From Ginglymostoma cirratum (taxonomy: Eukaryota), in the NCBI GenBank assembly GCA_024137785.1, contig JAHRHZ010000282.1:62001-126000 (forward strand): DNA of 64,000 nucleotides, written 5' to 3'. Positions within the stretch are counted from its first letter, which is position 1; every line of letters begins with the position of its first letter. Below are positions 4,732 to 60,456 of the stretch, piece by piece. The notes beneath the pieces were generated by a model that saw only the letters and a list, made by a program, of their open reading frames with translations, made no database searches and was not told where the DNA came from. The translations under genes were made by a program, and so were the position numbers.

Positions 4732-4801
4732 ATGTGTGGCCCAGCAAATGGCCCATTCTGTGCCATTTATTATCCAACTCTTGCTGTTATTGGTGTCCCT
4801 G
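4732..4801 (+). CDS. GPR139/142-like GPCR first coding exon (open; no partner exon 2 found nearby)
   Basis: 70 nt, MCGPANGPFCAIYYPTLAVIGVP+G|gtaagt; same length, phase and motif as exon 1 at 50850-50919. Confidence 0.8.
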
Positions 4802-5029
4802 GTAAGTAACAGGTTCCAAATATTCATTTTTAAGTGCAACAAAATCTTTCTGGTCAATATCAGGATTTGTGTGATATTCCCAGTTGAAGGAACCTCGGCC
4901 CAAGTTCATACATAGACATGCAAAATTTTAAGTTATACTGAATGGCACCCATTTGCAAGACGCAAGATTATATCTAACCTGTGAAGGAGAAAGCAGAGTT
5001 GACGTTTCGGGTCCGGTGACCCTTCCTCA

Positions 5030-5350
5030 GAACGGTGCTCAGTGGTTAGCACTGCTGCCTCACAGCGCCAGGGAGCCACGTTCAATTCCATTATCGGGCG
5101 ACTGTCTGTGCAGAGTTTGCACATCCTCCACATGTCCGCTTGAGTTTCCTCCAGGTGTTCTGCTTTCCCCCCACAGTCCAAATGATGTGCAGGTTAGGTG
5201 GACTGGCTGAGCTAAATTGCACGTTGTGTTCAGGGGTCTGTAGATTAGGTGGTTTATACGGGGATGGGTCTGGGTGCGCTGCTCCAAGGTTTGTTGTAGA
5301 CTTGTTGGGCCGAAGGTCCTGTTTCCACACTGGAGGGATTCAATGATTTG
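5030..5350 (+). mobile_element. tRNA-derived SINE (HE1-like)
   Basis: GGTGCTCAGTGGTTAGCACTGCTGCCTCACAGCGCCAGGGA head, CCACAGTCCAAA.GATGTGCAGGTTAGG body, CCTGTTTCCACACT tail. Confidence 0.78.
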
Positions 5351-11230: not shown

Positions 11231-11238
11231 AGAAGCAG

Positions 11239-14735: not shown

Positions 14736-15598
14736 ATTTTGGAACTTAGTTTTTACTTTATTGCTACCACTGCAGCTCTCTTAACTGGTAAGTTGAAAAG
14801 ATATTTATCACTGTCAGTCGCAAACATCGCATTTATTACATTTGACACAGAATTATCCATATCTTGATCTGAAAAGAAAAGATTTGGATCCTTCCTGAAT
14901 TTGTCCATAAAACAAATGGCATGCATCAGCTGTAACGTTTTGCTGAATGGTTCATGGACCGAGCCCAGCACATTGAATTTAATGTTTTATTTGATATAGA
15001 CCAGCCGTATTCACGGAACAACATTCCCTCACATCACACTAATCCCCTTAGGGAATAGAGCACCATAGGAAACACTGAAAGTACGTTAAATCAAATAAAA
15101 TTACATGTCAAAGAGCATTTTAACCTTAATATGTTTCTGTATAATTTTCTAATTTAGTTCAAAATTAAGTGTCACGATTGTTGAATTGATTCGGACAGAG
15201 AAAACCACAGTGAAATATCAAGATTTAAATTAATATCTCTTTGGGCTTTTGCAGGGCAATGTCGCAGAGACTGTTTCACAGACACTGGCTGAAACCTCAG
15301 TAATTGGAGGAGATGATGTTCAATTATTCTGTAATTACACAGTTTCAAAGAACAATTTGCCTTACCTGTTCTGGTACCATCAATATTCAAGTGGATTCAT
15401 AGAGTTTTTGGCTCGTCAGAACAGCTTTAGAAGGAAAGCAGAAGAATTTGCATCAAATCGTTTTTCAGTGAAACTCAATGAATCCAGCCAAACTGTGCCG
15501 CTTAACGTTACTAAATCACAGCTGACAGACTCCGCCGTGTATTACTGTGCACTGAGCCCCACAGAGACACAGGATTGGAGTGAACCTGTACAAAAGCT
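14736..15598 (+). pseudogene. TCR alpha/delta V (V2) with defective leader; V domain and 23-RSS intact
   Basis: Leader homologue 14736-14787 starts aaacATT (V1 has aaacATG); canonical acceptor 15254/15255 is out of phase (2-nt loss versus V1); ETVSQ..FCNY..LFWYHQ..DSAVYYCALS is open; CACAGAG (15560-15566) + 23 nt + ACAAAAGCT (15590-15598). Confidence 0.88.
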
Positions 15599-15974
15599 GT
15601 CAGACTGCCGAGCAACCTGTCAGCGGATGGGCGAACTGAGACTTTGACAGCAGTTTCGTCAGCAGTGAGACTCCATGCATTCGAATTCTAGTAAATATAT
15701 TCAGTGAAAATGCATTAATATGCATTTATATATTCCTACCTTTATCAAGTAACAAAATATGCAGGTTCAGTGACCAAAGAAGAAATGAGGAGCGAAGTGC
15801 TATTTATGCAAGTAAACGCAGGAGGAAAACATACTCACAGGCTGGGTCTCTCTGCGAAGTGACAACTGGCACCAGTTAAATTGATATGAAATTAAAATAA
15901 ATGGATGTGAACGAGATTAATGGATGTTGTTGTTTATTTGGCAGATCAAATTGGCAGAAAAAAGAAACCTGCAA

Positions 15975-21381: not shown

Positions 21382-21709
21382 GCTGTTTGTACATACGGAC
21401 TGTGCCTGTGGTATTCCAACACGCAGTGATGCCGTAGAGTCAGGACATGAGATCCATCAATACTTAAAGGAACCGTTTCATTGTCTTGGTCCAAGTAAAC
21501 CGGTCAGAGAAATCTGGAGATATCTTTCCCCTGACTCGAGCCATATCTCTTTAGTAAATATCTTGGAGTTTTGCGACAAGAGTGAATGCACCAAAAGAGA
21601 ATTTCGGCAGCATATTTTGTAATGTAATTACAGTTTAGTGTTACAGCCATTCCTTCCTCAATCATTAATACTGCCAGCTCTTGGGAGACTAAATGTCGCC
21701 GATTCGTTC
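21382..21709 (-). pseudogene. TCR V pseudogene (Vd)
   Basis: Acceptor ttaaag|; TNRRHLVSQELAVLMIEEGMAVTLNCNYITKYAAEILFWCIHSCRKTPRYLLKRYGSSQG..(frameshifts)..SPDFSDRF..LDQDNETVPLSIDG..HCVLEY; CACAGGC (21410-21404) + 13 nt + ACAAACAGC (21390-21382). Confidence 0.85.
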
Positions 21710-23268
21710 CTTTAAGATCACGTAGAATGTGCGAAAAAATGCTTGTGAATGTATCCTGAGAATCATATGCTTGTGGCTTTTGTTCAAATCACCGAACAGC
21801 ATGATCTTCATTGCCAGTAAAACATGGAGAATGCACATGGTTACTGATTCAGTTGCAAATAGTTCATTAAATTTTTTTTGGTACATCTAGTGTTCAGTTG
21901 AGGTTCCAGCTCTGATCAGATGCAAGTTACAATTATTTGGAAAAAGTATCAGCGTTTCTCTGGGCTACGATTGGCCAGTCTCCCTGAGCTGGCATCAAAA
22001 GTGCACCAATGACTATTCCCTGATATGCAAAAGCGGCTGGTGTTGTCCAATCCCATTCCTCTGTGTCCAGCTGCTTTTCTTACCCTTTCCATTCTTTGAT
22101 TCTTTTTATTTTAATACTGTCACTTCCTTACTTAAACATGCTTTCCATTGTTTTCAATACTTTTCGATATTGAAAATGTATGTTTTAATGTCTAATTTAG
22201 GTGCAGCAATAAATGCCAGAAAATTCCCTAATTTTAAATCCACGTGGAATACCATTCAAGTTACGCACATCATCAATTCTTACCGTGTGAAATCACACAC
22301 CGATGTTGAGTTGTCACACATTTCTAAACCGCGATTTTTTTAAAAAAAAAATCTTTCATGCAATGTGGGTACCACTGACGAGCCATGATCTTGTTGCCTA
22401 CATATCATTTCTCTTGAACTGCGTTCCTCACTATACCATTTCTGAGGGCAGTTACTGCTAAGAAGCATACTCCTGCGCATTGGAGTCACTTGGGTTCCAG
22501 ACCAGTGAAGGAGGCATCTTCCTTCCATCAAGACATATAATTGAGCAATTCTTTTAATTTAATCTTTTAATCAATAATGGTCATCATCGTCGCCATTCCT
22601 GAGTCTATTTTTTAATTGTCGAATTATTTCGTGCACTAAAATTCCGACAGCTACCCCGGTGAGATTTGAAATAGGGAAAAACTAGTGCACCATAACACTG
22701 GGGCTCATTTTGACCCACTAAAATATTGATTCAACCAGTTTCAATTGTAATGAAGAAATTTGATGAAGCGAGGCACTTGAGGCTGCTTTTGTGATTAATT
22801 TATTTCTGAAGGTAGCCAGCTGATTGAGGTGAGCCACATCTAATACCTAAACACTGGATTCATGAACAAAACCTGTTGATATGAGGCTGACCATCCGCAA
22901 ACACTATTTAAAAATAGGAGACCAGGCATTCAAAACATGAACAAACAGGTTTTGTTTAATTTATGGATGATCACGAGTGTTTAGAGTTTTCTTCTTCCTC
23001 AAAGGCCAGTCGAAGTACAGTCTGCGAATATTTTAGAAGTTGAGATAGATCGATTCTTAATAAGCAATTAATAGAAATCTTATCGATTAGGTGAGGATAT
23101 GGGGTGATCATTTCAACTATGATCTTATCAATGACCCAGAATCATGGAGGGGCTGTAACGACTGCACTTGCTTCTGTGTCTCTATGCATTTATGTTTCCC
23201 TGTACAGATACTGAATGATTCAGTCACCAGCACTTTCTTGAACTTACCATTGATTTCGACATATTTTC

Positions 23269-23501
23269 AGTTTTTGTATGAGGTTTGAGGCATTCTAATT
23301 CACTGTGGGTCTCAGAGAGCAGTAATACACAGAGCTGTCTGTCATCTTCAAAACTTTCACAGCCAATTGAAAAATGCCTTGTACGAGATTGAGATTCCCA
23401 CTCAAATGCTGAAAGCTCGGAACCGTTTTGTTATACCCATAATGACTGACTCTGAGCAGATAATGATCGGCTTGAGATGGATACTGACAGTACCAGAACA
23501 A
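23269..23501 (-). pseudogene. 5'-truncated TCR V pseudogene (V3) with near-consensus 23-RSS
   Basis: LFWYCQYPSQADHYLLRV..LKMTDSSVYYCSLR; in-frame TAG just upstream and no recognisable FR1 or first Cys; CACAGTG (23307-23301) + 23 nt + ACAAAAACT (23277-23269). Confidence 0.88.
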
Positions 23502-24369
23502 GCCATGCTATCCGTGTATCCAAAGACATTAGTGGGATGCTATAGACTGCGCAGTAAATTGACCTCAATGGAGCTTGGTGGAGAAGGGGGAGTGGGGGCT
23601 GGACCGTGTGGTGGGGTGAGAGGAAATGTTGGGAACGTCGATTTCTGCTGAAACTTCATTCATTTTAAAATTTCTTTTCCTACGTTCTTTTTATTGGAAA
23701 TGATGGAGACAAGTTCATGATCAATATGTGGAGATGGGTGGGGCATTGTGCTGGACCTTGGGGAGGCACGATACTTGCGGCTTTGTGCAGACAAATCGTG
23801 CAGGGTGGACGAGTAGATTTCTGTGTTTGCCATGGGGCTGGGGTTGTGTCACGGGTTACTTCGTAATGTTTATGCGATACATCATAGCATGTAAAACAGG
23901 GAGCACTTTTTTCATAGAATAACTGGATCTGCAGGACAAACATAACAGAGCTTTAAATAGTCATGAAGAAAATAAAGACGGATAAAAAAGTCATCATAAA
24001 GGCTGTCCTACTTGGAAACTTAAAACTTTAATTTGAGAGAAATGGTACTGGTGAAAATTAACTGTTCAGTTGCCATCGGCTTCAAGATTAATGTAGTTTT
24101 CGAATTTTGATTAGAGCTGAACATTAAGATCAGACAGCACCCATGGAAAGTTCTCCACTCGAATCTGCAAAGCTTTTTCTCATCACGGATACTTTGCTGT
24201 TTGCTTATTGTATCTTGTGTATTACATTCTCGTGGGAGCTGATGATAATTTCTACTCGTTTGGCCAGGAACAAGTTCGAGAACATTATCATTATTATGAA
24301 CCATTATGTTATCAGAAAGTCTATAATTCAGCGAATAAAGACAGTTATCCCAGTTGTTGCATATCCTGT

Positions 24370-27460: not shown

Positions 27461-27729
27461 TAAACAAATGGCAGCAGGACGTGACCAATGGGCAGTGGAA
27501 ACAGTGAGGGTGGACATAAATCACAAGTTCTCCTCTCGTCCAGCAGTAAAGAATTTCCAATTGTTCTGGAGATGCTTCAGGTATCTGTAAAGTAGGAGAA
27601 TTTGTTTTTATACCCCTTTAGTACTGGACCGTCTTTTGATCAGATTGCTGGAACGGGTGGATATAGAAGCAGTGCACACTGGGCCAGTCTGGTGGGGAAA
27701 AAAAGAACAACATGAAGGGATTTAACAAC

Positions 27730-29706
27730 CCCTCATTGCTCAAGGGATGCAACAGAATGAGGAAGAACGGGCGAGAAAGGGTAAAGATCTGAAAGAAGTA
27801 ATTGTAAGCCTGCCAAGCTGGCCAGATGCAGAAGTTAGCTTTGAGGCTTCAAATCCAGGGTATCCCATCCAAAATGAACAAACGCTTGAAGGCAAAGTAG
27901 AAAGGGACGTTTTTGATAAAGCTCAGGACACAGATCAGTCCATTGTTCAGTGATGCCGTTTCCTCCGTGTAGTGTCTAGTCTTCAGGTTCTGGTCGCAGA
28001 TGACCACAAAACAGTCGATAGTGAAGGCAACTGTCATCAGATGGAGCAATCGCCTGTGGCATAGGCCATCAAGACGCTGGATCCGCACGCAGAAGTGGTG
28101 GGCGAGACACTTTCCCGGGAGGAGATACGGCTGATTCCGTTGAGGATAATTGTGGTGGTTGTAAAATGGAAATCACTCACTGCAATCACCAACATATTGG
28201 TAGATGATGCAGCTGGAGAGACCGCACCGCCCTTGAGTTAGATGAAGATCGCCAACAAGTCGATGTGACTTATCAAAAGACATAGATATTATTGAACTCT
28301 TTCGAGCCAGCGGCTGTTGCCTCCTGCAATCTCCAGCCATCACCTTGCCACTTCCAATCTCCGCCTATTTTTAAACTATTGACAAAATTGGACATCCAGG
28401 GCAGCATAACACATCTGTTCATATGATCAGTACTGGGAATAAATATCGTTCTCTAGTCACTGAATAAATGTCAGCGGCTACTTGTCTAATTCAGAATAAA
28501 CAGAATAATGTGGTGCCCATGAACTAATTCATGCCATGCACCGGTCATCCTTCTACTCATAAACTCGCTAACGATGTCTCACCCTTTACAATCTCATCCC
28601 AGTTTTCAGAAGTTCCAGCGTCTCGCCATATCCATTCATGTAACATCCAACAACAGTTATAAATCTCATGTTAACTGCCATTCTGTCTCCCTCGTGTCCC
28701 TCACATTGCTACTTCTACCTGTGTCGTTTAATGGTTTAATGAGCAAAACTGTAATCGCTGGAAGTATCACTGCAGATGCACGACTACTGCCACCTTCTTT
28801 CAGACGTTCTTTTGATCAACCCTTTTAATAATATATCACATTCGTCCGGTATAAATTCGTTTACTAAATTGTTCTGGCTATTCACCTCTGCAGTGACGTG
28901 GCTCGGATGAAGTGCGCCTTTTCTGGTTTTTATTTAAAGATACAAATATCCAAAATGGCAAAACTTCGCAGCAAGGGAGCAAGTTAACAACAGGTTAAAA
29001 GTCTTGAATCTTCATGGGCGTCTTTTGGACTAAACTCTGATTAATTCCAAAGACCACATTAACAATGGTGCAGTCCATTGGGAACTCCAGTATATCGGAC
29101 CATGAAATGGACTGTAGATTCATGTAATCACTGACCATATGTTTGTATTACAAAACATCACGTGAGGTACTACCACAAAGTAAATCGTATTCAGACACTG
29201 CAATGAGACATGTGATAAATAGGCATTTTAGCGCAATGATAAACAATTAACCTTATAATGGATTAAAACACTCGTTTGCATATTACGGAATTGGAATGGA
29301 GCATAATCTGTGACAATATTACAGTTTAATGTTGAAGCAAAGTCATTCATCACGATTTGTAGTTCAGCGTCTAATAGGCAATGTTCCTGTAAATATACAA
29401 CATGCAGAATTCAAGAACGACTTGCCGTTCATTACACTGAAATTCTTAATAATGTTCGATTATTTGCTACAGCACAAGTAATATCCAATAACGTAATAAT
29501 TGTCTTGGAAACGGGTTGAAGTCCCTTAAAATCAAAATGTTGCATGTTGGAAAAATTCCACCGAATCGTGGAAGAGAAATAAATTTGTGGAAATACACAA
29601 ATATGACAAAAATATTCTTGAGCATCAGTGACTTACCAGAGGCAGTGTTTGCAGCAAGTATTTAATAGCAAATGACAAAGAAGACAGCAATGACTGGCGT
29701 GTGCAT
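27730..29706 (-). pseudogene. GPR139/142-like GPCR pseudogene (exon 1 29706-29637; exon 2 relic about 28266-27730)
   Basis: Exon 1 is 70 nt, MHTPVIAVFFVICY*ILAANTAS+G|gtaagt; exon 2 relic GRCGLSSCI..VIAVSDF..TVAFTIDCFVVICDQNLKTRHYTEETA..ICVLSFIKNVPFYF..DGIPW aligns to the intact copy, with frameshifts and loss after TM5. Confidence 0.88.
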
Positions 29707-32885: not shown

Positions 32886-33096
32886 TGATTTTGTGCAACT
32901 CTCTCTCCGCTTTGTGTCTGTATTCCTCACCAAGTTCAGGCTATTGTACAGCTCTCACCGTGTTCTGTATCATTGTGCTGTAATCTTCCCAAGTTCAGGA
33001 TTTTGTATAGCTTTCCCCAGCTCTGTATCTCTGCCACAGTATTGGCCACCATGTTAATATTTTTGGAGAGCTCTCTCCGTGCTATGTATCTCTGTG
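32886..33096 (-). repeat. Tandem array of four RSS-like units (period about 53-60 nt) 3' of the supporting V
   Basis: Unit 33096-33058 CACAGAG-23-CCAAAAATA; unit 33035-32998 degenerate heptamer-22-ACAAAATCC; unit 32977-32939 CACAATG-23-ACAATAGCC; fourth nonamer-like ACAAAATCA at 32894-32886. Confidence 0.75.
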
Positions 33097-33404
33097 TGCT
33101 GAGCGCGGACTCCTTGCACAGTAATAAACAGCAGAATAATTCAGTTGTATTCGAGAGATCATTAACCGACTGGTTGTCGCCTCAGGATCAATAGAAGCAG
33201 AAATTCGTCCTCCAGCGGCATTTTCTTTCCTCTGCTCTCCTGAATTGTCTCTTTGAAGGAGGTATTTCAGAGCTTGTTCTGGGGACTGACAGTACCAGTA
33301 AACTCTGTACTGACAGAATCCTGAATAGTCTCAGCTTAAAGTAACGGTGTCACCTGCAGCAGAAGTTTGTCGAGGCGGCCTCTGGGACACCAGGGAATTA
33401 GAAT
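33097..33404 (-). pseudogene. NAR-TCR supporting Vdelta exon (leaderless, CDR1 Cys), inactivated
   Basis: Acceptor cccacag|AT; (D)SNSLVSQRPPRQTSAAGDTVTLS*DYSGFCQYRVYWYCQSPEQALKYLLQRDNSGEQRKENAAGGRISASIDPEATTSRLMISRIQLNYSAVYYCARSPRSA; first Cys codon is TGA (33333-33331); phase matches the upstream J donor. Confidence 0.9.
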
Positions 33405-44850: not shown

Positions 44851-44867
44851 AAAAATAAAGCCAGAGA

Positions 44868-44990: not shown

Positions 44991-45501
44991 CATTCTGTGC
45001 TTCAGCTCTATGCCTGGAATTACATTTACTCGAGCAGTACTGGCGACACAGACGCAGGAACACATCCTCCCCCGATGAGAACCATCTGGATCTAAACTTG
45101 TCCCAAAACGCAGCACTGTTATGGAGGAATTAGCAAATGTTCCTGAGTGAATAACAATGTCAGAGTTCGGCTAAATATCGAGACAGGAGTGAGGCCATTG
45201 AGAAGATTTGACATGGGCCGGGCTTTTAAAATCAACGACTGCTTCCAGTTTTCCCTTCAAGTCGGGAGGTGAAATGGGAAATCACCTTGTTAGAAGAGAG
45301 TGGCCTGTACATTAGAGGAAGTTTCGTTTCATCTGTCGAAGCTCTTCCCGGTCCCAGTCACTGAGTTGTATGAAATGGATTCTTGTTTAGCTTCCCTGCC
45401 CTATTTGTTTGGTTATTGTTCAAGGTGAACGGGCTGATTCTGTGCGGTAAGAATTAATGAAATTACTTTTTTAAATTTACTATCACTCCTGTTTCTTACA
45501 G

Positions 45502-45830
45502 GACTTTGTCTTGCAGATTCTGTCTCACAAACACCGGCCATAATCGCAGTGAATGAAGGTGAAGATCGCCTGTCATTCTGTAATTACGCAGCGACAACAA
45601 GCAGTGATCCTTACCTGTTCTGGTACCGTCAGCATTCCAGCGGCTCCATGGAGTATCTCCTAAAGAGAAATCAATATATCAGGAACTCAGAGGGAATTCC
45701 AGCACGCCGGTTTTCCTCGGAGTTTGATCATGTGAACCGCACTATTCACCTGAAAGTATCGAAAACAGAACTGATAGACTCCACAGTGCGCCCCACAGAC
45801 TCTGAACTGGCTTGACCCCGTAGCAAAACT
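45502..45830 (+). pseudogene. TCR V pseudogene (V5), paralogue of V1
   Basis: LCLADSVSQTPAIIAVNEGED..FCNY..LFWYRQHSSGSMEYLL..DFDHV-like EFDHVNRTI..ELIDSTVR; the YFC motif is deleted (15 nt versus V1); CACAGAC (45794-45800) + 21 nt + AGCAAAACT; no leader found. Confidence 0.9.
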
Positions 45831-46539
45831 GACAGAGAGCCACTGAACATGACAGTACAATTAGAAAACAGTGAGACGTGGGCCAGATATGAAGTTGTTC
45901 CCGAATTCACAGTGATATCTCATGCCTCTCAGTCGAACACAAAGCTTTAATCGTTAATAATCTGTTATTAAAATAAACTAATACCATCAGTTCATTGAAT
46001 GAAAAAACAAATAATTTATTGCGTGGTTTTCGACATGTCCCAAAGTGTTTCAATGTTTCAGAGACGATGTGATGTCGCAAATGCAACAGCCAGTTCAACA
46101 CAAACAAAATCCTCCGGTTACGCAGAGAATTGCAGCGCTCAGTTTGTGAGACAATAACCTGTCATGTGATTCTAACAATGAAACACTCGTACAACTCGAA
46201 CATTGGCAAACACATTGCGGGTTATTGAGTACTGTCCCTCTACCTTCACATGTGTAGCCCCAGAATCGTGAGTGATAGATTTAGTGGTTCAGGATTCATG
46301 CAGCCTTGGTTTAAAATGTAAACGAAACTGGGAGTGAACTCACATCTGAACAACATTAACCGATTAAAGGCGTTTTGTGTTGACTGAGTCAGAACCCCGA
46401 GTGAAATACTTCTTAAAGATATTGATCTGACATCTATATGTATCTTCAACATTGAGTCTTCAATTCCCGGGTTGAAAAAGACTCCCAAATCTGGAAACGG
46501 AGCATTGGAAAGAAAGGAGTCTAGAATTTCAAATTCAAC

Positions 46540-46690: not shown

Positions 46691-46694
46691 AAAC

Positions 46695-47020: not shown

Positions 47021-48859
47021 TGAAAAGGATTTCCTTATCTCTAAAGTGATGACTGTTGCAGATGACTAATGGACAGATCACCGACTCAGTCTTCCTCTAT
47101 GTCTGTAGCTTGGTCCCAAAAAAACTTTGAAAACGAAGAAACAATTCAGAAGAATATTCAATGTGGAGGGGCGACATAGTCTCGGAATGCAAGGGTGCAG
47201 CCACTCATTCAAACTTTGTGAATAATAACATTGACTTATGTCCCATTTAAAAAAATGTTTACGCTTTCCCCTGTGAGGCCAATATGATAAACATTACATG
47301 AGAGAAACACTGTGCTGGACAGATCAAAAGTGGGCCTGGTTAGAATGCTAATCTGTGCAGTTGGACAGCACTTTCGATCGAAGATGTAGAGTTTGGCTTG
47401 AATAACTGGGAATTCTGGTGGCAAATTGATCTGAAAAAGAAGTCATGAAACGACACAGCATATCAGTAGATAATTTCTGTGCCAGCTCTTTTCAAATAAC
47501 TTGCAATTTATCCCAATTTCCTTCTGTTTCTCCAAATCTCTTATCTCTTAACATTCCAGTTATTATCCAGTAGTTGTTGAAAACCCCGACTGAAGAAAAA
47601 ATGAAAATATTGAGTCGTTTTTCCAGTCGCCATGTTTGAAAATTAACTATTACAGACACAAAAGCAAGCAGGGTTGTACTTAGGTACTTTATGCTGTTTT
47701 TGACCTTGTAAAGAACCTCTCAAAGTTGCCCTTGAATGCGTCAGTCTTGTCTCATTGTTAAGCTTGATGGATTTTGGATGTTTAAAGCAGTGTATCTGTA
47801 GCTTGTGGCTTTACTTACCTTCGCTTTTCACCTCAATTTCATCTCTAATACACTTGAAGATGTCATTGGCTGAAGAGACCGCTTGTGTCTGAATTAAATT
47901 TGCTGTTGTTCGGTGCTCCCACTCTTGTCTCACTGGCTTGATCCTCATCAGGGAATATAGCAGGAGAGGCAGGCGAAGGTCTCGTGGTATTACCGCTGGA
48001 CTGTTCATCCAGAGACCCAAATAATTTTATGGGGACCTGGGCACAAATCCTGCCATGGCAAATGGTGGAATTTGAATTGAGTTAAAAAAATGGAATTAAG
48101 AATATAATGATGACTATGAATCTATTGTCGATTGTCTGAAAAACCCAGTCCTGCTGGAACAGAGACACGCCAGGTAACTCCATCAATAAACACATTGAAT
48201 TGGACCCTGTGCACAAACCATTGAGAAACAGAGAGGGAAGTAATATCAACCACTACACAAACCGAGGGATATAAGTAACAAGCAGGACAGAACACTGATA
48301 CTTCATCGGAGGTGCACTGGAAATACTGTCTAGCAGTATGACGAAATGTTTGCACCCAAACCCATCGGCTCAGCAAACATGTCTATAACCTCAAACACGA
48401 TCACTGCTCAAGTTCAATGGTGAATCTTGAAAAACAGTGAATTTACAGACAAAAGGTGACAAGAGGAAATGCAGCATCACTCACTATTCTCTACACAAAG
48501 AAATATACATCGACAGCCGCACATCGTTAAATATTATTGGAAAGAACAGTAGGGGACTATTTGGCCCTTCATATCCTGCTTACTCTGACTATATCTCTTG
48601 TCACATACTCAATCTCAGAGCTGCCAGAGGAGGTGGTGGAAACGGGCACTTTGGCGGCATTTGAGAGGCTTCTGGATGATTAGTTGGATAGGGAGGGATA
48701 GAGGGATGTGAACCGAATAAGGTTAGAAGGTTTTTTTTAGTTTATTCAGGGCATGATGATAGGCACAGGCTTGGAGGGCTGAGGGGCCTGTTCCGATGCC
48801 ATACTTCTGCTTTGTTCTTTTTTGTTCTTTCGTTCAGTGTGTCAAAATGCACAGTGATC

Positions 48860-49950
48860 CAGATTAATGACAGTGACCAGTTCAGCGTGGGTCAATTAAG
48901 TGAGAGTCAACTCTCCTCCTCATGCCCTAAAAAAATTTCGACCGACATGTGATGGAAACGTCAGGCACAAGACAGCAGTTTATTGATGGCGGTGTTTTTA
49001 TAATGGGTATCTTCAAATATCTGACTTTCTGCACAGTGGACAGTGCAGTGCGGCTGCTCAGCATCTGGTTTGCCTGGGGAGGACTGCTAAGAGGTACTGA
49101 TGAAGGAAATACCGTTCACATTTCTTTCCAAATTGTATTTTGAACGAGGATGAATTCTTTCCTCGATTTATTTCCTCGCCAAGGTGAAATAAATTGAACA
49201 AATACAACTTAGCAGGGGCTGAAAAAAGTGTTTGTCAATGTCGACAAATAAAGTACACTCGAATGCACCATGAGGTGATCGACCCGCAGCATTAGTAATG
49301 CTCACTTGTGTATAAGCAGATCTGACAACCAGTGATCGTCAGACTTACAAATGAATTAAAAAGCGAATCTCTGACCAAAAATGCAGATTCTGCCTTCCTG
49401 AAAAATAAGTTAAAAAAAAACCACAAGCATATTAAATGAGTCAGTAGTGGAAAGAAACTAAGAATTTAATGAAGAATCTTGAAGTAGGGTCACTGGACTC
49501 CGTTTTGTCTCCACAGACGTGACCAGAGCTGCTGAGTTTCACGAGCATTTTATTTCATTTAAGAATTAATTATTTTGAAATTAAAATAACGATAAACATA
49601 AAAATAGAATTCTGATACAGAAACTGGAGCTGATGATGTTACAAAATTAAATAATCCGAGGTTTATCAACAGGAGAGTGGAGTGTAAAACACAGAACCTA
49701 CAACTAACAGCCCACTTCCTTTCAGAACAAGCTGTTCAAATCCTTCGACTGGGTTGTAGGTCTTCTTTAGGAGCATGTTACATTGCAGGGTGTTGTGAAA
49801 TAGAGACTGGGTTTGATAGCAACGAAAGGTACGAGAAGGGAAAGAAAGGCAAGAAGTGAGAGAGTGACAAAGGAAGGAAGTGAGACAGGAATGAATGGAT
49901 GGGAAAAGGTAGAAAGAATTTAATAAAGAAGTGAAGAAATGAATAAACAC
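48860..49950 (+). repeat. Second copy of the 1.1-kb block at 26350-27460
   Basis: Same colinear shared words as the first copy. Confidence 0.85.
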
Positions 49951-50849: not shown

Positions 50850-50919
50850 ATGCATGGAGCAGCCAATGGTCTCTTCTTTGCAATTTGCTATCCCATTCTT
50901 GCAGTTATTGGTGCCCCTG
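50850..50919 (+). CDS. GPR139/142-like GPCR, coding exon 1
   Basis: MHGAANGLFFAICYPILAVIGAP+G|gtaagt; phase 1 joins CC AAT TTG at 59555 to give ..IGAPANLVTIII (TM1). Confidence 0.88.
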
Positions 50920-51549
50920 GTAAGTAATACCTCTCCGATACATCTTTATTTGCGTCTAGATTATTTTCCCTTATCTTTCAGGATAAAATTGATTTGTTTC
51001 CTAGTTAGGGACGCAGAGCTCGAAGGACCATGTGAGTGAAGTAAAAGCTGAATGAGGAGCAGATTAGGTCCACGCAGCAAGCTCGGAGTGGTGTTTTCAG
51101 GTGTAACTATACAAATGGATTACTGTTCAGATATATAACTAACAACCATCAAATAAGTCAAATAGTTTTTTATAAGGAGGGAATGACCCGATGATTAAAG
51201 ACATCTGTCAATCAGCTGAAAATAGTCGGTCTCGTTGTTGTTGATTCTTGTAGCAGGTAGCTAAACCAGTTAATGACTCATCAGGCACTATAAATAAGAA
51301 TTTTCCAAAACATCCAGTCATTAAGGGGCACTCTAACACACCTGAAGGAAGGCTACGCCAGTTGAATAATGAATTATATTCATGTGGAAATTTGATTCAT
51401 AAGTGAAAGATATGGTTTAAGTCAAGTTTATTGGAATTAGTAAAGGGTGCTAAGTATTGGGCTAATTTATCAGTGCGAATAGTAAGATTTATCACCAGTT
51501 GCATGGTGTATGAAGTTAAGGCCACGTACAATTGTTTATGTAATTAAAC

Positions 51550-54500
51550 CAAAGTAGAATGAAGTGAAGTAATAGTATGGTATTGCAGGGCAGCTCAGCA
51601 GCCTTTGGACCGTCTGGCATGTAATATGTGGGAAGACATAGTCACGTATAGCGGTTTAGATAAACACAGTTAAGGAGTGTTACAAGTTGCAGACACTCGA
51701 CTTCTAATTTTAGAGCCTAGAGTCACAATGGCACATATGTGAGTCTCAATGCACTTTGAAGACCCTTTTCGGCAAGGGAGATGCCTCACAGTCTAGAAGC
51801 ATGGAAGCAGAAAGGGAAATAATTACCCTCAGGCAGTAAAAGCCAGTAATGCACAAGCTCCTGAAGTCCCACTTGTTCAGCAAATTTTCATTTTCGATAC
51901 TGGCAAAGGTGTTGGATCCTCATATGAGTTCAGCCAAAGTCGTTACGTGTGGTTAAACTAGATAACAAGGTTCGAAGGGGAGGAGGAAGAAACAAATGAC
52001 AGGGGATTCGAGTGTTTGGAGAACAGGCGGTTCTTTCTGTGGTCATATATGATACGTTGCTAGCATGTTGTCTCCTTGGTGCCAGGTTTAAGTTCCAACA
52101 TAACTGCAGGGCATTCTTTTGGGGGATTGTGAACATCCAGAAGTTTGATCACGCAGTGACAAATGTCTCGGGCAGAATGAAGATGATATCCTGAAACCAA
52201 TATTGCAGGAACCAGGATCAAGATTGATAAAAAGGAACTCAAAATTAGCAATGTCCATATTACTCCTAATCCAAATTGCCGTTCAACATAGTAACAGGAC
52301 ACTTCGCGATTGAACACAAGTCCGGAAAGCTGGTGGAGTACAGCGAGCGTCCTGGGCAATTGTCACTGGTTCTGTGGCAGGTGGAACTTTTACACAATGT
52401 TCTTGACGTACTCTAACAGGAGACGGGTAAATATCCTCGCAGGAGTATTCATTCGTGCTGATGGGGAAGGTTCAAAGTAGATTGGGGAAAAAGGACTTAA
52501 TCCTAAGCTCGTAGTTGACTGCAGTAATTCAAAGCAAAGAAGAATAAAAGATAAATAGGAGACAAACATAGATCAAAAAGGATCAGAACACAGAATAACG
52601 GCCAAATAAAATTCAACGATCTATATCTGATTGCATGTAACATTTGAAAAAGAATTGATGTTTTGGAAGCGTACATTTAGGTAACTGGACATGATTTGAT
52701 TGTCAATTCGGAGAAGTTGCTAAGGGTGACCAGTACGGAGGACTGAATATCCAAGGTTATTGAATATACAGGAGAGATAGATAAAAAGAAAACAAAGTGA
52801 CACTTTTAGTGTGGGACGAGATCAGTAGGAGTGGACCTCAGATCGAAGGATCATGATATGGAATCAGGTTCGGTGGAAGATTATGGTCGTATTGCTAAAA
52901 TGTCAGTTGTGGAGAGCATGCCAGGATTTCTAAGTGAACTTCGATCGTCTAAATCAATAGGCTAGTACATCGCAAATGGTTAACAGCCATATAGATACAT
53001 AACAAATAAAACAAAAGCCTTTCTACATATCAACTCAGCAATGGCCGGATACAAGCACTGATTTATTCCGATCCAATCTTCCAACTGTTATTCTATAGTT
53101 GTGTACATCTAATTACCCGTGTAGAAAACGGAAAGACATTTAAAAATCTGTTTACAGGATATAGGCGTCATTGGCTGGACATATATTTACTTCGTATCCG
53201 TGGTTGCCCTGGATATGGCGGTGATGAGCTTCATTTTTCAAACCGTACGGTCCACGTGGTTTAGATAAACTCATCAATGGAGGTAGATCAGGAGTTTTCC
53301 CCAGTAACATTGAAGGAATGGACTTATAGTCCTCAGTGTGGATGATGAGAGTTTTGGTGGGGAGCTTGCATTTGGTGGTTTGCATGTGAATGTTTGATCA
53401 TTCTAGCTCCAGATAGAGGTGGTCGGAAGTTTAGAAGATTTTGTCAAAGGAGTCTTAGTGAATTTCTGCAGTTCATGTTTTGATAATCCATGCAGCTGCT
53501 TTTGAGTGTCGATTGTAGATTTGACCCATAGAATTCAGCTCTTTAGATCACATTTGCTCAAAAGCTGTAATGAGATTAACAACTGAGTGGCCTGACTTGA
53601 TATCAAACTTAGCAGCAGTGAACAGATTATTGTTGACGAGTGTTGCTTGATATCACTGTTGATGACTCCTTCACTTGCTTAACTCATGATCGAAGGTAGA
53701 CTGACAGAGCAGTAATCGGTTGGGAGGCTTTTGTCAAACATTTTTGTCAACGATGTACCTCCATAACATTTCTATATGGTTAGATAGATGCCAACGTTGT
53801 AGTTGTACTTCAAATACCTGGCTAAGGGTGCAGAACATTCTGAAGCAGAAGTTTTCAGTGCTATTGCCAGAATTTTGTTCGAATCCATTGCCTTTGCAGT
53901 ACCTAGCGTCTCAAATTTGTTTTGAAGTCACGTCGAGCTGATCAAATTAAGTGAAGTCTGGTATATTTGATACGACTGGCCTGTGGAAGAGGGCAAGATG
54001 TACGAAATCATTTACTTTGACATAAGAAAGGCACAATTTTTCTTGTAAAGTGAGAGGTTGAGAAATGTGAGCAACCCAATGTATCTTGGTGCTCTTGATT
54101 GATTCAACAATCACTAAGAGTGAGCTCCTAGATTCACAAAGTAATTAGAAAGGCAAATTTTACGTTAGCCTTCCTTGTATAGGAGTTAACATTTGTTGCA
54201 TAAGTTGCATAGAGCATTGTTCTGACCTGTACAGGAGTGTTGTGAACAGTATTGGCACCCTTATCTGAGGAGGAATGAAGATATCATAGAGGGAATGCAA
54301 TGCATGTCAACATAATAATTCCTGGGATGACAGAATTGTTTTAAAGTGTGAGACTGGGTTTGGTTCTCATTCTCGTCTCGGAGAATGATAGGTGACATGA
54401 TTGAAACATACATTTTACAGGGACCAACAGTGTGGATGCAGATAAATTGTGAAAAACTAACCTTATTTTCGTATCCAAAAAAAAATTGCATGCAAAAACT

Positions 54501-54580
54501 GTCTTAGATGCATGGCAGTATAAGGATTCATTCAATAATTGCTCGAGTCTGTGGTGCCACTTCTGGAAATACGTAATTGT
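51550..54580 (+). mobile_element. Heavily decayed CR1-like LINE remains in the GPCR intron
   Basis: Degenerate endonuclease-like stretch (about 52600-52900) and RT C-terminal-like stretch (about 54000-54560: gtattggcacccttatctgaggagga, ggtgacatgattgaaacata). Confidence 0.5.
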
Positions 54581-57500
54581 TACACCTTTGTGCATTCCCA
54601 CTTGCCAGCGCACAATATTGAAACAATGTTAGGAATAAATGTTTGAGAGTTTTAAAGATTTGAAATGTGTTACAATGATTTTCATCTACTTTATAATTTG
54701 ACTTGTGCTACTTTGTATTAAGCACTTAAATGGTATTCTGAATAATCATGTTTGAATTCATTCATGAGATGTCATTGTTGCTTGCGAAGTCAACGTGTAT
54801 GCCTAATTTTTAGCTTCGAATTCAGGAACTAGCGATTCTTTAATGCCTCAAATAATGGAATCATGGGACTCCATCACACTTCATCGAACAAATTTAATAT
54901 CGAATTACATAGGAAGCTGTTTGATCGAAAACTTTGGGGTCAACAAGTTAGAAGGGTATAAGGAATGTTCCCATTAATGAAGGAGAGACTTCCATTGAAT
55001 GAGGGATTTCTGAGATCAGAGACTCAATAGTATTAAGCCTCACCAGGGTAGCACATTGAAAAGTACATGCCACTATTCCCTTAACATCACAAATGTCAAT
55101 GATCTTATTAATTTATGCACATTTCCACAACTTGGTTGAGTTGGTTGATTTCTGTACTTCATAATGTCATAAAGCAGAGGTTGACTCCTCGGAGAACTAA
55201 AACTGTAATACACAAAGAGGAGCACCTCGCCCTCTAATACGCAAAAAGAGTGAGAAAAGTGGTGTAATCTACCTTTCAGCATCTTCTAGTTGTTAAACAA
55301 AATAAATCCTTATATGCACACTAAAACAAACAATAGCAATTTATGTACCTGAATTTAACAGTGAACAAATTAATTAAACTATTAACAAACCGAATGAATT
55401 CCTTCTAACTACTAACAAGTATCGAATAAAGCAAGATTCTGAAGGTATGCTGTTCTAATAAATATATGCCCCAATTACACAAAAAAAAACACTGGAATTT
55501 AGTCTCTCGAAATCTCTCGGTCTAGGCCCGAAACATCAGCCTTCCTGCTCCTCTGATGCTGCTTGGCCTGCTGTGTTCATCCAGCTCTACACCTTGTTAT
55601 CTCGAAATTACAGCCAGGTTACATATCTTCTGGAATGTTCCGTCCCTTCTCCGTCGATTCTTTTGTCAGGAATGTCTTCTCCGTTGATTCATCTGTCAGG
55701 AATATGAACGAGTTGTGCCGTTGGTACATTGAGATGTTGCTTTCACTAAGCCATAGCAGAGATCATGAGAGCCAATGATTCCCTCTTGACAGATGAGGGC
55801 TGTTAGCTCTGGCGAATGGCAGCTTGCTCTGGGGTCTTTGTCCAGATGTATCTTTCTTTTAATACTGTTAATAAAAAATGAATGTTTCTTACAATAGGAT
55901 TGGCCTTATGTTGTCAAAACCATCAGACTTAAATTTAATAGTTTTTTGGTATCTAATGACCTGGTTCAAATTGAAGGCTAAATTCAAAATCCTGTTGCCT
56001 CGGTTAAAAAAAAGCAGTTGCTTCACCTGCTAACTGTACGGCCTTTAGATAGAAATGTTTCAATTCAGGTGCTCTCTGTGTACTTGCAAACTTTCATGTA
56101 GCTCTCAGAGTCGTTCATTTTACATCTCTAGGCACAGAAAAAAATCGCACGATTTTTTTTAACGGGACCAGGCAATGCCTTCCCCCTAACATTTTACAAA
56201 CACCAAATTCTAACTTCCCGACTCCCAATACACAGTACTCTATCAAAATTCGCTGCAATAAGAATGACTATTACACATCAAGCGATTCTAGCTACAAGTA
56301 AACAGTTATGAACCACTGATGCAAACTGCATTTGTTAAACTATAACGTTATAAAATTCTGCCTTACCACATACAGTTAAAGATAGACCCCAAAAAAGTGG
56401 GTGTTATAGGTGGAGCAGAAGACTAAAAATGCAGGTCAATGCATTTTATCGACGGCGCCTGCTGAGATGATTCTTTTGGCATGTCAGGACGTGCTGTTCC
56501 TCAATCTTCCTTCGACAGGTAATTTCATATAGGTGATGGAGGCATAGAGCAACTGGTTCACACTAATAAAGGCTCTGACATTGGTTAAAAGCCGCAGATC
56601 CATGAACTGTTAAGGGGAAATGAACTAGCTGTTTCTTGGTTTAAGGTATTTCTAACTGCAGAGAAAAAAATGCCTCTTTGATTTCCTAACATCCACGGGC
56701 TACTGCACAAGCATTCGCACACGTTCTCATGTTCTTATAAGATGATTAGTTATCTCGCAGCCAAGAATGGAGTTGTTGGCAGGCAGAAACCCTTTGACGC
56801 TAACATCTGCTAACTACCATCTAAAGGATTCTCTGAAGCCTGCCTGTGACATCCATGACTCTGGCACTAGGGAAGAAATGTAACGTTCTGAAGTCACATT
56901 TAATGCCGCCGAATCAATATGAAATTTCCTAAAGCTATTTCTCTTTCATTCGTCCCCTTCTCCTGTGCTGTTGTTTGCCTGTAGTGTCATGGACTTGGTT
57001 GTGACATGGCTTTCCTGACAGGCCATTGTTCACCGAAGTTTCCAAAATGGAATATGATTAGGGAACAAGTTAGGTTTATGTTTTATAGGTTGAATTCAAA
57101 TCCCAATGTCAAATTGTTCATTTCAGCGTTTAACCAATAAGGCAACAAGACACAGTCTAATGTAGTAGCCCAATAAATGCTGCTCACGTTGTAAAATGTA
57201 CCTATTAAAACAGGGCAGCCGTTTTATGGGCTTTTGCAGCTCTTCCTCTCCACTTGATCTGAAGGCACAAGCCGACATTCGGTTTCAGATCTCTTTTCAA
57301 TTCCTCGAGGGCCTTGTGCTTGCAATTGGACAGCAAGATAGCTTCACTTTCAAACAACCTATGATCCTTGTCACCCAAAGTGTTGTTTATTAACTCTTTC
57401 CAAACAACCACCGTAATCAGTATGATGAGTTGTATTCTGAATGGCCGAGATTAGGTGAGGTTAATTGTTGATTGGTTTAAGGAACACAAAATCAATTCCT

Positions 57501-59554
57501 CAATATCTGTCAAGGGGAACGGGCATTGACTGATGTCACCTCCAAATGTCACATTCTGGCTGGTTCCTTGGTTCAATTATCGGTGAGTTCACACTGTTAA
57601 TTGAGTTTTAATACTGTCATTCAATGACATTTTACGATTATACAGGTTAAAGGAAAAAAAACAAAAAAGGGGAAATGCAGTCAGGACCCAATGATTAACA
57701 TCCTTGTGCCAATGTCTCAAACTGACGTAATTAGTGAGGTTCGCATTAATTCAGATGCCTACTCATCACTGACCATTTGCTCTTCTTCAGACGCATGAGT
57801 TGTATGATTTTTGAATGCTTGGAATGGGCTTTACACTGTCCTTTAGATTTTAAAGGCAAAGTTCAAACATCCAGCAGCTGAGTTTATATTGGTGTACAAT
57901 GCAGGAGAAAAGGCCCTTCAACACTTCGAGTGCGTGCTAGTTAAAAACAAACATGCAAATATCCTCATCCAATTTTCGACCACTTGGCTCATATTCTTAT
58001 ATGGCCTGGCATCGGATGTATATCTGGGACACAGGGTTTGTCCACGATTTCATACATTCTGGATGATGTAAATTGGCCATTCTTGGCCATACTTGGCCAT
58101 TCTTACCTGCTGTCAGGTAATGCTAAAAAACTACTTTGATACTTCTCCCTCATCACCAAATCATCCGTGGTAATACTTTTTACCTATTAATCACGTAATC
58201 ACGGCCAGTAAATCACGTATGTTCTTCAATTGAATAATTTATGTGCAAAGCCAGTTAAGAGTATTGCAGACCATGAAATTTGCAAGAAACATAGGGAGAG
58301 GGCCAGGGCACTAAATCAAAATGGCGTTGAATCCAATCCCTTTTTACGTTGAGATTTCTGATGAGATACTTGGTTTTCTTAATTTTCTGCTACAGTAATG
58401 AATACCGTATTCCAGCATGAATTTTAGATGTTTTACAGATAACAATCACTCTCATGCATCTGAGATAAAAGGTACTGCAGATGCTGGAGAATCCGAGATA
58501 ACAAGCGTGGGGCTGGATGAACACAGCAGGTCAAGCAGCATCATAGGAGCAGGAAAACTTGACGTTTCGGGCCTAGACCCTTCATCAGAAATGGGGGAGG
58601 GGAAGAGGGTTCTGAAATAAATAGGGAGAGAGGGGGAGGCGGATAGAGGATGGATAGAGGAGAGGATAGGTGGAGAGGAGGCAGACAAGTCGAAGAGGCG
58701 GGGATGGAGCCAGTAAAGGTGAGTGTAGGTAGGGGCGTAGGGAGGAGATAGGTCATGCATCTGTCTGTTCAATAAGACTATTTTAACTTCTTGGCAAGCT
58801 ATTGGTGCCAGGTCTAAATATGACTTTTACTCTATAATTAAACATTCCTAGTCAAATTCCCGCTTTAATCGAAATTCCAAGATATTATCTCTGTCTCTGT
58901 ATCACTTCTGTGAAGTTTCCCACTTTTTGACCGTGCAGTCTAATCTGCCTGTATAAAAATATGACCACAGAGAGCAAATGTTTCCCCTCAGCTTCGTTTG
59001 AATAGTCAGCCGCAAGGTTTGATTTAGAGACCAGAAAGCAATTTATAGACAAGACTGATTGAAGTACAATTCACATGAACAAGTATTTTCTCAATTTTTG
59101 GAACTCAAATAATTACTGATGTTTGTGCACTAGTCAGAGGTTGGTTGTGGACAAAGACTAATCAGTCGTAACAAACACAGAAGCTGCTAGAAAAGCTTAA
59201 CAGGTCTGGCAACGTCCGTGAAGAAAAAATCAGAGTTAACGTTTCAGGTCCGTGACCCTTCCTCAGAACTGATGGTGGCTAGAAAAACGTCAGGATATAT
59301 GCAGAAGGTAAGGAGAGCGAATGGGGTAGGGAGTAAACGATAGGATAAAGGATAGAGCCCAAAGAGAGAGAAGAGCAGTGGGATTGACAAAGGGGATGAT
59401 TGAGATCTGGCTTGGAGCATGAATAGCTGTTAATTGGGTCTCTTAGTGACTCACAACAAATAGTGACTAACCAGCCGTGTTTATGCACTGAATTAGATTG
59501 TAACTGATGTTCAGAGTCATTTCTGTAACATTCCTCTCTCTTGATCTCTCACAG

Positions 59555-60456
59555 CCAATTTGGTGACAATCATAATCCTTTCCCGAGGATGGTGCGGACT
59601 GTCCCGATGCGTCACTTACTACTTGTTGGTCATAGGGGTGTCTGATTTCCTTGTCATTATCACCTCTGTCATCCTCAACAGAATTGGACGTATCTACTTA
59701 AGGTATAGTGTTCTCTCAACTACACCCGGTTGCACGCTTAGTGCGGTGCTGGTTCGTTGGACTCGGGATAGCTCTGTTTGGCTGACAGTGGCGTTCACCA
59801 TTGACCGCTTTGTAGCCATCTGTTGCCAGAAACTGAAGACCAGATACTGTACTGAACAAATTGCATTGTTGGTTATAGGAACGATCTGTGTCCTGAGCTG
59901 CATCAAGAACATTCCCTTTTACTTCATCTACCAACCCTTGTACATCCAGGATAAAGTGCCCTGGTTCTGTGACGTCAAGGTCACCTTCTATACTTTGCCT
60001 GTCTGGCAGGCCTACCACTGGCTGGACCACATCTTAACCCCGTTTCTTCCATTCCTTCTCATATTGCTTCTCAATGCACTGACTGTGAGACACATCTTCG
60101 TGGCCAGCAGAGCCCGCAGGAGGCTTCGAGGTGCATCGAGTCGTGAAGACTCAGAGATGGCCAACCGCAATAAGTCCATCGTGCTGCTTTTCACCATCTC
60201 TCTCAGCTTCCTCTGCCTGTGGGTCACCTACGTCGGGCAGTTCCTCTACGTGCGGGTTGCAGGTGTGGTCTACTTCACGGGTCTGAATTTCAATGACCCA
60301 CTGTACATCTTTCAAGAGATGGCTAACATGCTCCAGTTACTCAGCTCCTGCAACAACGTCTTCATTTATGCAATATCACAGATCAGGTTTCGAAAGGAAC
60401 TGAAGAATATGCTGATGTATCCCTTTACGACGATCACTGCTTGCATTAAAGAGTAA
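59555..60456 (+). CDS. GPR139/142-like class A orphan GPCR, coding exon 2 (spliced product 323 aa)
   Basis: Acceptor ctcacag|CC; seven hydrophobic segments; VSDFLV (TM2), AFTIDRFVAICC (DRY-like), ECL2 PWFC, LTPFLPF (TM5), CLWVT (TM6), SCNNVFIY..RFRKEL (TM7/H8); 70+902=972 nt open frame. Confidence 0.93.

What the first reader, a model, noticed from the sequence alone, without database searches (positions are those of the whole stretch)
4732..60456. A GPR139-like GPCR family interleaved with TCR V segments, each copy 3-5 kb 3' of a co-oriented V
Seen: three paralogous 70-nt phase-1 first exons at 4732 (+), 29706 (-) and 50850 (+). Each lies downstream of a same-strand V RSS: V1 ends at 1628 (3.1 kb), the supporting V at 33058 (3.4 kb), V5 at 45830 (5.0 kb). 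V1 and V5 are paralogues with homologous flanks. Known: mammalian TCR loci carry passenger genes (olfactory receptors among TRAV, trypsinogens in TRB). Inference: a V+GPCR unit was co-amplified. Because the GPCRs sit 3' of recombining RSSs, V(D)J joining would delete or invert them clone by clone, so T cells could differ somatically in GPCR content or expression depending on the V used. I am not aware of this having been described, but cannot check the literature here.
Basis: partly seen in the sequence, partly recalled or inferred. Interest (0 to 1): 0.8.

Follow-up and report, generated by a model that had tools for sequence, protein, structure and literature searches.

The report
Passenger GPCR genes among shark TCR V segments
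Between the T-cell-receptor V segments of this shark DNA lie one working gene, one dead gene and one stray first exon of a large shark-and-ray-only receptor family; they look like bystander genes, as smell-receptor genes do in the mammalian locus, not like parts of a V-linked unit.

Summary
The three 70-nt phase-1 first exons are real, paralogous and at the stated places (4732+, 29706-, 50850+). Each lies 3.1, 3.4 and 5.0 kb 3' of a co-oriented V RSS.

They are not three genes:
- Copy 3 is intact (exon 2 at 59555-60456, 323 codons). It is 95% and 92% identical to whale-shark and zebra-shark proteins.
- Copy 2 is dead: a stop in exon 1, and exon 2 broken and cut off at TM5.
- Copy 1 is a lone exon 1 with no exon 2.

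No V+GPCR pair has both partners intact. V5 lacks the second cysteine and has a 21-nt spacer. The supporting V has TGA at the first cysteine.

The V1/V5 duplication is a 1.3-kb unit that ends 560 bp past the RSS. Its non-coding flanks are 68-71% identical, against 52-54% for the GPCR exon-1 flanks. Copies 2 and 3 belong to different old subfamilies. A co-amplified V+GPCR cassette is therefore not supported.

The spacing is only nominally non-random (P 0.009-0.04, n=3, threshold post hoc).

Four RNA runs of the species gave zero depth on exon 2; their tissues are unknown.

This scan has already found the same family among TCR V segments elsewhere in this genome. Verdict: ordinary passenger genes.

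The parts
861..2186 (+). V1 duplication unit. It holds the leader, the V-alpha-type V exon (1249-1589), the 23-RSS (1590-1628) and 560 bp of 3' flank. It is paralogous to 44993-46407.
   Evidence: Pfam V-set 8e-13. The best solved relatives are TCR alpha chains, E 1.8e-17. RSS read. nhmmer E 9e-154.
4732..4801 (+). GPCR copy 1: a lone first exon. It has an open frame, 23 codons plus 1 nt, and a GT donor. No exon 2 follows it.
   Evidence: 44 family proteins hit it. No exon-2 relic between 4.8 and 15.2 kb by tblastn with 120 proteins or by a family HMM on six frames.
15249..15598 (+). V2: an intact-looking V-alpha-type segment with a 23-RSS (15560-15598). No GPCR lies 3' of it.
21382..23504 (-). 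Two pseudo-V segments at 21417-21725 and 23256-23504. The second has a perfect 23-RSS at 23307-23269. No GPCR lies 3' of either.
27702..28340 (-). GPCR copy 2, exon-2 relic. It covers family positions about 21-200 only. It has a frame switch and in-frame stops, and the 3' half from TM5 onward is missing.
29637..29706 (-). GPCR copy 2, first exon, with an in-frame TAA.
33058..33390 (-). Supporting V of the NAR-TCR cassette, with its RSS (33096-33058). It has an in-frame TGA (33333-33331) where the first conserved cysteine should be.
44993..46407 (+). V5 duplication unit. V exon about 45471-45793; RSS-like element 45794-45830. The second conserved cysteine (YFC) is deleted, the spacer is 21 nt and the nonamer is AGCAAAACT. 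Probably a pseudo-V.
   Evidence: (translation ...LIDSTVRPTDSE).
50850..50919 (+). GPCR copy 3, first exon: open frame with a GT donor.
59555..60456 (+). GPCR copy 3, second exon. AG acceptor at 59553-59554. 902 nt including the stop. Together with exon 1 this makes 972 nt, that is 323 codons plus stop.
   Evidence: Pfam 7tm_1 1.2e-16. 95% identical to whale shark P0001 and 92% to zebra shark P0002. GPR139 is the only solved relative, E 4e-9.
48836..49949 (.). A 1.1-kb dispersed repeat, also present at 26325-27466 (73% identical, same absolute orientation). It accounts for part of the longer V5-to-exon-1 distance and is not part of a shared V+GPCR unit.

Best explanation
The window is part of a shark TCR alpha/delta V array; earlier notes of this scan say the species is very likely the nurse shark. 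Members of a large, elasmobranch-restricted orphan GPCR family, distantly related to GPR139, lie between the V segments as passenger genes and evolve by birth and death.

The window holds one intact and conserved gene, one dead gene and one stray first exon. Their closeness to co-oriented V segments follows from two things. The array carries about one V-like segment per 9 kb. Old block duplications and one block inversion (about 16-38 kb) carry both gene kinds along together. It does not come from a defined V+GPCR cassette.

V(D)J deletion will remove such genes from some T-cell chromosomes. This is an unavoidable by-product, as it is for OR genes in mammalian TRA and trypsinogen genes in TRB, and most likely has no functional meaning.

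Shown here: the gene anatomy, the state of each copy, the limits of homology, orthology of the intact copy, and the absence of RNA reads in four runs. Inferred: that the genes are not used in T cells, and that the family's real role lies elsewhere, perhaps in chemosensing.
For: - Copy states: searches give one intact gene, one dead gene and one lone exon 1.
- V partner states: searches show that no pair has both partners intact.
- Homology limits: nhmmer and blastn find a V island of 1.3 kb and an exon-1 island of 250 bp. Only SINE-like pieces in differing orientations lie between them.
- Divergence: V flanks are 370/544 and 274/386 identical. GPCR exon-1 flanks are 95/179 identical, against an unrelated-DNA control of 45 +/- 4.6%. 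Fisher p is 4e-4.
- Tree: copy 3 groups with whale-shark and zebra-shark proteins at 100% support. The copy 2 relic lies in another starred clade.
- Family size: 1436 hits at E<=1e-5, and the best 120 are all sharks, rays or skates. In epaulette and bamboo sharks the close relatives lie on many different large scaffolds.
- Purifying selection on the intact copy: 15/299 residue differences from the whale-shark model in exon 2. Parts of the same model that read through non-coding DNA show 12/77 differences (p 0.005).
- RNA: no RNA holder in the index. Depth is zero over 59400-60399 in X6 (polyA RNA-seq), X7, X8 and X11.
- Precedents: PMC4574546 and PMC2685407.
Against: - The spacing and orientation are nominally non-random (P 0.009 to 0.042).
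- V followed by GPCR exon 1 is collinear in units 1 and 3.
- Ten of the eleven whale-shark proteins and five of the six zebra-shark proteins among the best 120 lie on the same scaffold as this gene's likely orthologue. The nearest subfamily is therefore concentrated in one region and may have expanded along with the V array on a coarser scale. An earlier follow-up (s1-879695) reported copies of about 50-kb blocks.
- The tissues of the RNA runs are unknown, so expression in thymus or T cells is not excluded.
Confidence: 0.75

Rival explanations
1. An ancient V+GPCR unit was duplicated as a block. The interleaving and co-orientation seen today are its remnant. Later V-only duplication or gene conversion, repeat insertions and decay erased the continuous homology.
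For: - V then exon 1 is collinear in units 1 and 3, with exon-1 paralogy.
- Spacing P is 0.009-0.042.
- The stretch 46.6-60.4 kb is collinear with the whale-shark gene model, so the local arrangement is old.
- Close relatives concentrate on one scaffold in whale and zebra shark.
Against: - There is no homology across 2186-4632 against 46407-50754 apart from independently inserted repeats.
- The neutral flanks of the two islands have significantly different divergence.
- The third pair involves an unrelated V type and a different GPCR clade.
- Three of six V-like segments have no GPCR behind them.
Confidence: 0.2
2. There is functional coupling. The GPCRs are expressed in T-lineage cells, and V(D)J joining deletes or repositions them clone by clone. 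T cells that use different V segments would then differ in GPCR content or expression.
For: - Location 3' of V RSSs.
- The intact copy is under purifying selection and conserved in two other sharks.
- The whale-shark automatic gene model starts 830 bp behind the V5-equivalent region, which could hint at upstream-initiated transcripts.
Against: - No pair has both an intact V and an intact GPCR.
- Depth on exon 2 is zero in four RNA runs, and seven further RNA-type runs hold none of its words.
- Ten over-long gene models of the family contain no V-set domain.
- The family also lies outside TCR loci (scaffolds; earlier notes s1-879536 and s1-879673).
- Deletion affects any gene between V and J whatever its adjacency, and one orientation class is untouched (inference from the standard mechanism).
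Confidence: 0.03

Closest known systems
Olfactory receptor genes interspersed among mammalian TRAV genes (OR10G2 and OR4E2 in human; Olfr1507-1509 in mouse)
   Same: Rhodopsin-class GPCR genes of a large multigene family lie between V segments of the TCR alpha/delta locus, in conserved synteny, with no known T-cell role (PMC4574546).
   Different: In mammals there are only two or three OR genes, at the 5' edge of the array. Here the GPCRs belong to another family (GPR139-related) and have two exons. By earlier notes of this scan they recur over at least 660 kb of the V array, many of them as pseudogenes.
Trypsinogen genes inside the mammalian TRB locus
   Same: An unrelated multigene family is embedded in and duplicated within a TCR locus: 8 genes in human, 20 in mouse, 5 in cattle (PMC2685407). 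Those lying between V and D-J are lost on rearranged chromosomes (own knowledge).
   Different: They are proteases expressed in the pancreas and sit in two clusters, not singly interleaved with V segments.
Human GPR139 (structures 7vug, 7vuh, 7vui, 7vuj, 9m42)
   Same: It is the only solved structure matched at E<=1e-5 (E 4e-9 over residues 1-280 of exon 2). It shares a DRY-type TIDR(F/Y)(V/I)A(I/V)C motif and a proline-less N-x-F-x-Y motif in TM7. RefSeq names family members 'probable GPR139'.
   Different: The similarity is distant. The shark family has hundreds of members restricted to elasmobranchs among the best hits, whereas GPR139 is a single conserved brain receptor (own knowledge). 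This gene is a member of a GPR139-related expansion, not an orthologue of GPR139.

Membership tests
Rhodopsin-class (class A) GPCR | Match to the 7tm_1 profile above the curated cut-off | tested here: met
   Exon 2 scores 61.4 bits against a cut-off of 30.5, E 1.2e-16, covering profile positions 17-260.
Rhodopsin-class (class A) GPCR | Uninterrupted reading frame over all seven helices | tested here: met
   Met for copy 3 only: 70 nt plus 902 nt make 323 codons plus stop, with GT and AG splice sites. Not met for copy 2 (stops, frame switch, truncated) or copy 1 (no exon 2). The exons were searched separately; the joined protein was not built.
GPR139/GPR142 group | Closest known relative by sequence | tested here: met
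   GPR139 chimeras are the only PDB sequences at E<=1e-5 (E 4e-9).
GPR139/GPR142 group | One-to-one orthology with vertebrate GPR139 | tested here: not met
   1436 relatives at E<=1e-5, and the best 120 are all elasmobranch paralogues at 53-95% identity. The match to human GPR139 is only distant. This is a lineage-specific expansion, not the orthologue.
Functional TCR V gene segment | V-set domain with both conserved cysteines, open frame, and a 23-RSS with a good heptamer and nonamer | tested here: met
   Met for V1 and V2. Not met for V5: no second cysteine, a 21-nt spacer and a weak nonamer. Not met for the supporting V: TGA at the first cysteine. Not met for the two minus-strand V relics, which have stops.
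   Homology ends at 2186/46407 and resumes only at 4632-4884 / 50754-51005. The third unit shares no spacer homology.
   68-71% against 52-54% identity in non-coding flanks, Fisher p 4e-4.
Passenger gene of an antigen-receptor locus | An unrelated gene lying between rearranging V segments | tested here: met
   GPCR exons lie between V-like segments at 1.2, 15.2, 21.5, 23.4, 33.2 and 45.5 kb.
Passenger gene of an antigen-receptor locus | No expression or role in lymphocytes | tested here: inconclusive
   Depth on exon 2 is zero in four RNA runs of the species and there are no RNA holders in the index. The tissues are coded and unknown.

The most novel reading that the evidence does not exclude
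The TCR alpha/delta V array of elasmobranchs is a main nursery of a large, undescribed GPR139-related receptor family. At least some intact members, such as the one at 50850-60456, would be transcribed in T-lineage cells. V(D)J deletion would then make T-cell clones differ in which of these receptors they still carry.
Probability: 0.03. Interest if true: 0.8.

Novelty: new member of a known kind. Interest (0 to 1): 0.25.

Why it matters
If the V-coupled reading were true, it would be a new way of making lymphocyte clones differ, which is why it deserved a test. The evidence here instead fits the known pattern of unrelated multigene families caught inside antigen-receptor loci.

What remains of some interest is the family itself. 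It has hundreds of elasmobranch-only, GPR139-related orphan receptors, and I found no paper about it. Cartilaginous fishes have the smallest known olfactory receptor repertoire of any vertebrate clade (mean 43.8 genes; PMC10869828). That point was already raised by earlier follow-ups of this scan and is not specific to this window.

Tried and rejected
The only indirect evidence is that pieces of the whale-shark gene model P0001 map collinearly to 46657-46773, 50809-50928, 51257-51370 and 59557-60453.
- An exon 2 for copy 1: tblastn with 120 family proteins and a family HMM on all six frames found none.
- Spacer homology between the three V-to-GPCR intervals: blastn with word 9 and nhmmer found only repeats.
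- The 1.1-kb repeat (26325-27466 and 48836-49949) as part of a shared unit: rejected. It lies upstream of exon 1 in copy 3 but beyond exon 2 in copy 2, and in the opposite relative orientation.
- Chimeric V-GPCR gene models: ten over-long family models showed no V-set domain.
- Splicing from exon 1 to exon 2 in reads: the two exons are 8.6 kb apart and read laying takes at most 6,000 letters here, so only exon 2 and its surroundings were laid.
Each exon was searched on its own.
- NCBIfam gave nothing.
- The large representative-protein search was not used, because the family was already clear.
Full report
**What is there.** The window is a V-segment array of a shark TCR alpha/delta locus. Earlier notes of this scan place NAR-TCR cassettes in and around it and take the species to be very likely the nurse shark.

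V-like segments found by tblastn:

| Segment | Coordinates | Strand |
|---|---|---|
| V1 | 1249-1608 | + |
| V2 | 15237-15647 | + |
| V relic | 21417-21725 | - |
| V relic | 23256-23504 | - |
| Supporting V of a NAR-TCR cassette | 33106-33390 | - |
| V5 | 45507-45806 | + |

V1 matches Pfam V-set, and its best solved relatives are TCR alpha chains (E 1.8e-17).

The three first exons are at 4732-4801 (+), 29706-29637 (-) and 50850-50919 (+). Each is 70 nt long, is followed by GTAAGT, and leaves one base of a split codon. They align with each other, including about 130 nt upstream. Many family proteins recognise them.

- The V1 RSS (CACAGAC, 23-nt spacer, ACAAAAACT) ends at 1628.
- The supporting-V RSS ends at 33058 and is followed by more RSS copies.
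- The V5 RSS-like element ends at 45830.
- The distances to the first exons are 3.1, 3.4 and 5.0 kb.
- V1 and V5 are paralogues with homologous flanks: 861-2186 matches 44993-46407.

**These are not three genes.** tblastn with 120 family proteins and a family HMM on all six frames find only two second exons.

- *Copy 3 is intact.* The acceptor AG is at 59553-59554 and exon 2 runs from 59555 to 60456. Together, 70 + 902 nt make 323 codons and a stop. Exon 2 matches 7tm_1 (E 1.2e-16). Human GPR139 is its only solved relative (E 4e-9).
- *Copy 2 is dead.* Exon 1 has an in-frame TAA. Exon 2 (27702-28340, -) has a frame switch and stops, and ends at TM5.
- *Copy 1 is a lone first exon.* Nothing resembling exon 2 follows it before V2.

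**The V partners.**

- V1 looks functional.
- V5 has lost the codons for the second conserved cysteine (…LIDSTVRPTDSE against V1 …LSDSAVYFCALNPTDTQN). Its spacer is 21 nt and its nonamer is weak.
- The supporting V has TGA at 33333-33331 where the first cysteine should be.
- No V-GPCR pair in the window has both partners intact.
- V2, which looks functional, and the two minus-strand V relics have no GPCR behind them.

**Was a V+GPCR unit co-amplified?** Four results bear on this.

1. Between units 1 and 3, nhmmer finds two separate islands. One is the V unit (1.3 kb, E 9e-154). The other is a 250-bp island around exon 1 (E 1.3e-14). Between them, 2186-4632 against 46407-50754 share only SINE-like pieces, and these are inserted in different orientations.
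2. The non-coding flanks of the V island are 68-71% identical (370/544 and 274/386). The flanks of exon 1 are only 52-54% identical (95/179), close to unrelated DNA aligned the same way (45 +/- 4.6%). The difference is significant (Fisher p 4e-4). The V1/V5 duplication is therefore younger than the split of GPCR copies 1 and 3, and did not include them.
3. The interval between the supporting V and copy 2 shares nothing with the other two intervals.
4. In a tree of 75 family proteins, copy 3 groups with whale-shark P0001 and zebra-shark P0002 at 100% support. The copy 2 relic lies in a different starred clade with bamboo-shark and epaulette-shark proteins. Its branch is long, so its exact place is less sure.

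These are old subfamilies, not products of a recent local amplification.

**Is the spacing more than chance?** With six V RSSs in 64 kb, the probability that three random points all lie within 5018 bp 3' of a co-oriented RSS is 0.009. It is 0.042 if strand is taken as given by the inverted block at about 16-38 kb. With n=3, a threshold taken from the data, and non-independence through block structure, this is suggestive at most.

**A coarser kind of joint expansion remains plausible.** Ten of the eleven whale-shark proteins and five of the six zebra-shark proteins among the best 120 relatives lie on the same scaffold as this gene's likely orthologue. An earlier follow-up reported copies of about 50-kb blocks (s1-879695, not tested here). 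The family is not confined to that region, however. Close relatives in epaulette and bamboo sharks lie on many large scaffolds. Earlier notes place members beside an Ig minilocus and in another GPCR cluster (s1-879536, s1-879673).

**The intact gene is conserved.** Exon 2 is 95% identical to the whale-shark model and 92% to the zebra-shark model.

- The whale-shark model's other pieces map collinearly to 46657-46773 (a repeat-derived ORF), 50809-50928 (the first exon read out of frame) and 51257-51370 (intron). The stretch 46.6-60.4 kb is therefore orthologous in the two species.
- Pieces read through non-coding DNA differ at 12/77 residues, against 15/299 in exon 2 (Fisher p 0.005). This is a rough sign of purifying selection.
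- Neither automatic model uses the canonical first exon in frame. Whether this reflects real transcripts is unknown.

**Expression.** No RNA run in the index holds the exon-2 stretch, and seven RNA-type runs of the species hold none of its words. I laid 55000-60990 on two raw-read RNA runs (X6, polyA RNA-seq, and X7) and two contig sets (X8, X11). Depth over 59400-60399 was zero in all four. Only dispersed repeats at 55.4-55.8, 58.4-58.8 and 59.2-59.4 kb were covered. The tissues are coded, so this does not exclude expression in thymus.

A V that joins by deletion removes all DNA between its RSS and J, so any gene in that interval is lost whatever V it is next to. A V in the opposite orientation upstream of J joins by inversion of the segment that starts at its coding end, so the DNA beyond its RSS stays where it is. 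Whichever way J lies from this window, only one of the two orientation classes of V-GPCR pairs can lose its GPCR in this way. This is an inference from the standard V(D)J mechanism. The same holds for OR genes among mammalian TRAV (PMC4574546) and for trypsinogen genes in TRB, which also duplicated inside the locus (PMC2685407).

**Literature.** I found no paper that mentions GPR139 together with sharks and TCR, or with elasmobranchs. The nurse shark alpha/delta locus paper PMC12227049 does not mention GPCRs.

**Verdict.** This scan has already reported the same family among TCR V segments elsewhere in this genome, with the same conclusion.

Noticed in passing
window 33331-33333 (-), inside the NAR-TCR cassette 33058-37525: The supporting V of the cassette has an in-frame TGA where the first conserved cysteine should be (…DTVTLS*DYSGFCQYRVYWYCQ…). 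The cassette that another first-stage note calls complete is probably non-functional in this assembly.
   Followed up: partly
window 1705-1744 and 45908-45945 (+): A second RSS-like element (CACGGTG or CACAGTG, 22-nt spacer, ACACAAAGC-like nonamer) lies about 115 bp after the first heptamer behind both V1 and V5, at homologous positions. It recalls the RSS ladders noted behind supporting V-delta segments.
   Followed up: no
window 45782-45800 (+): The deletion that removed the YFC codons of V5 left a perfect CACAGTG heptamer (45782-45788) just before the original heptamer CACAGAC (45794-45800).
   Followed up: no
window 26325-27466 and 48836-49949: An unclassified 1.1-kb dispersed repeat, 73% identical between the two copies, with no long ORF. 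One copy abuts the truncated end of the dead GPCR's exon 2.
   Followed up: partly
window 46549-46986, 50809-50928, 51257-51370, 54385-54450 (+): Automatic gene models of the whale-shark and zebra-shark orthologues use non-canonical 5' exons. These map to a repeat-derived ORF 0.8 kb behind V5, to the first exon read out of frame, and to intron positions. Whether these are real alternative transcripts or model artefacts is open.
   Followed up: partly
window 11237-14200 and 17521-20545 (-): Two LINE copies with endonuclease and reverse-transcriptase ORFs (Pfam RVT_1 and Exo_endo_phos_2). One has a 507-codon open frame. They fill the space where an exon 2 of copy 1 might once have been, and the space behind V2.
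   Followed up: partly
window 55400-55800, 58400-58800, 59200-59400: SINE-like repeats in the GPCR intron are covered at very high depth in all RNA runs, by reads 95-99% alike that mostly run on into unlike sequence. These are transcripts of other copies elsewhere in the genome.
   Followed up: no
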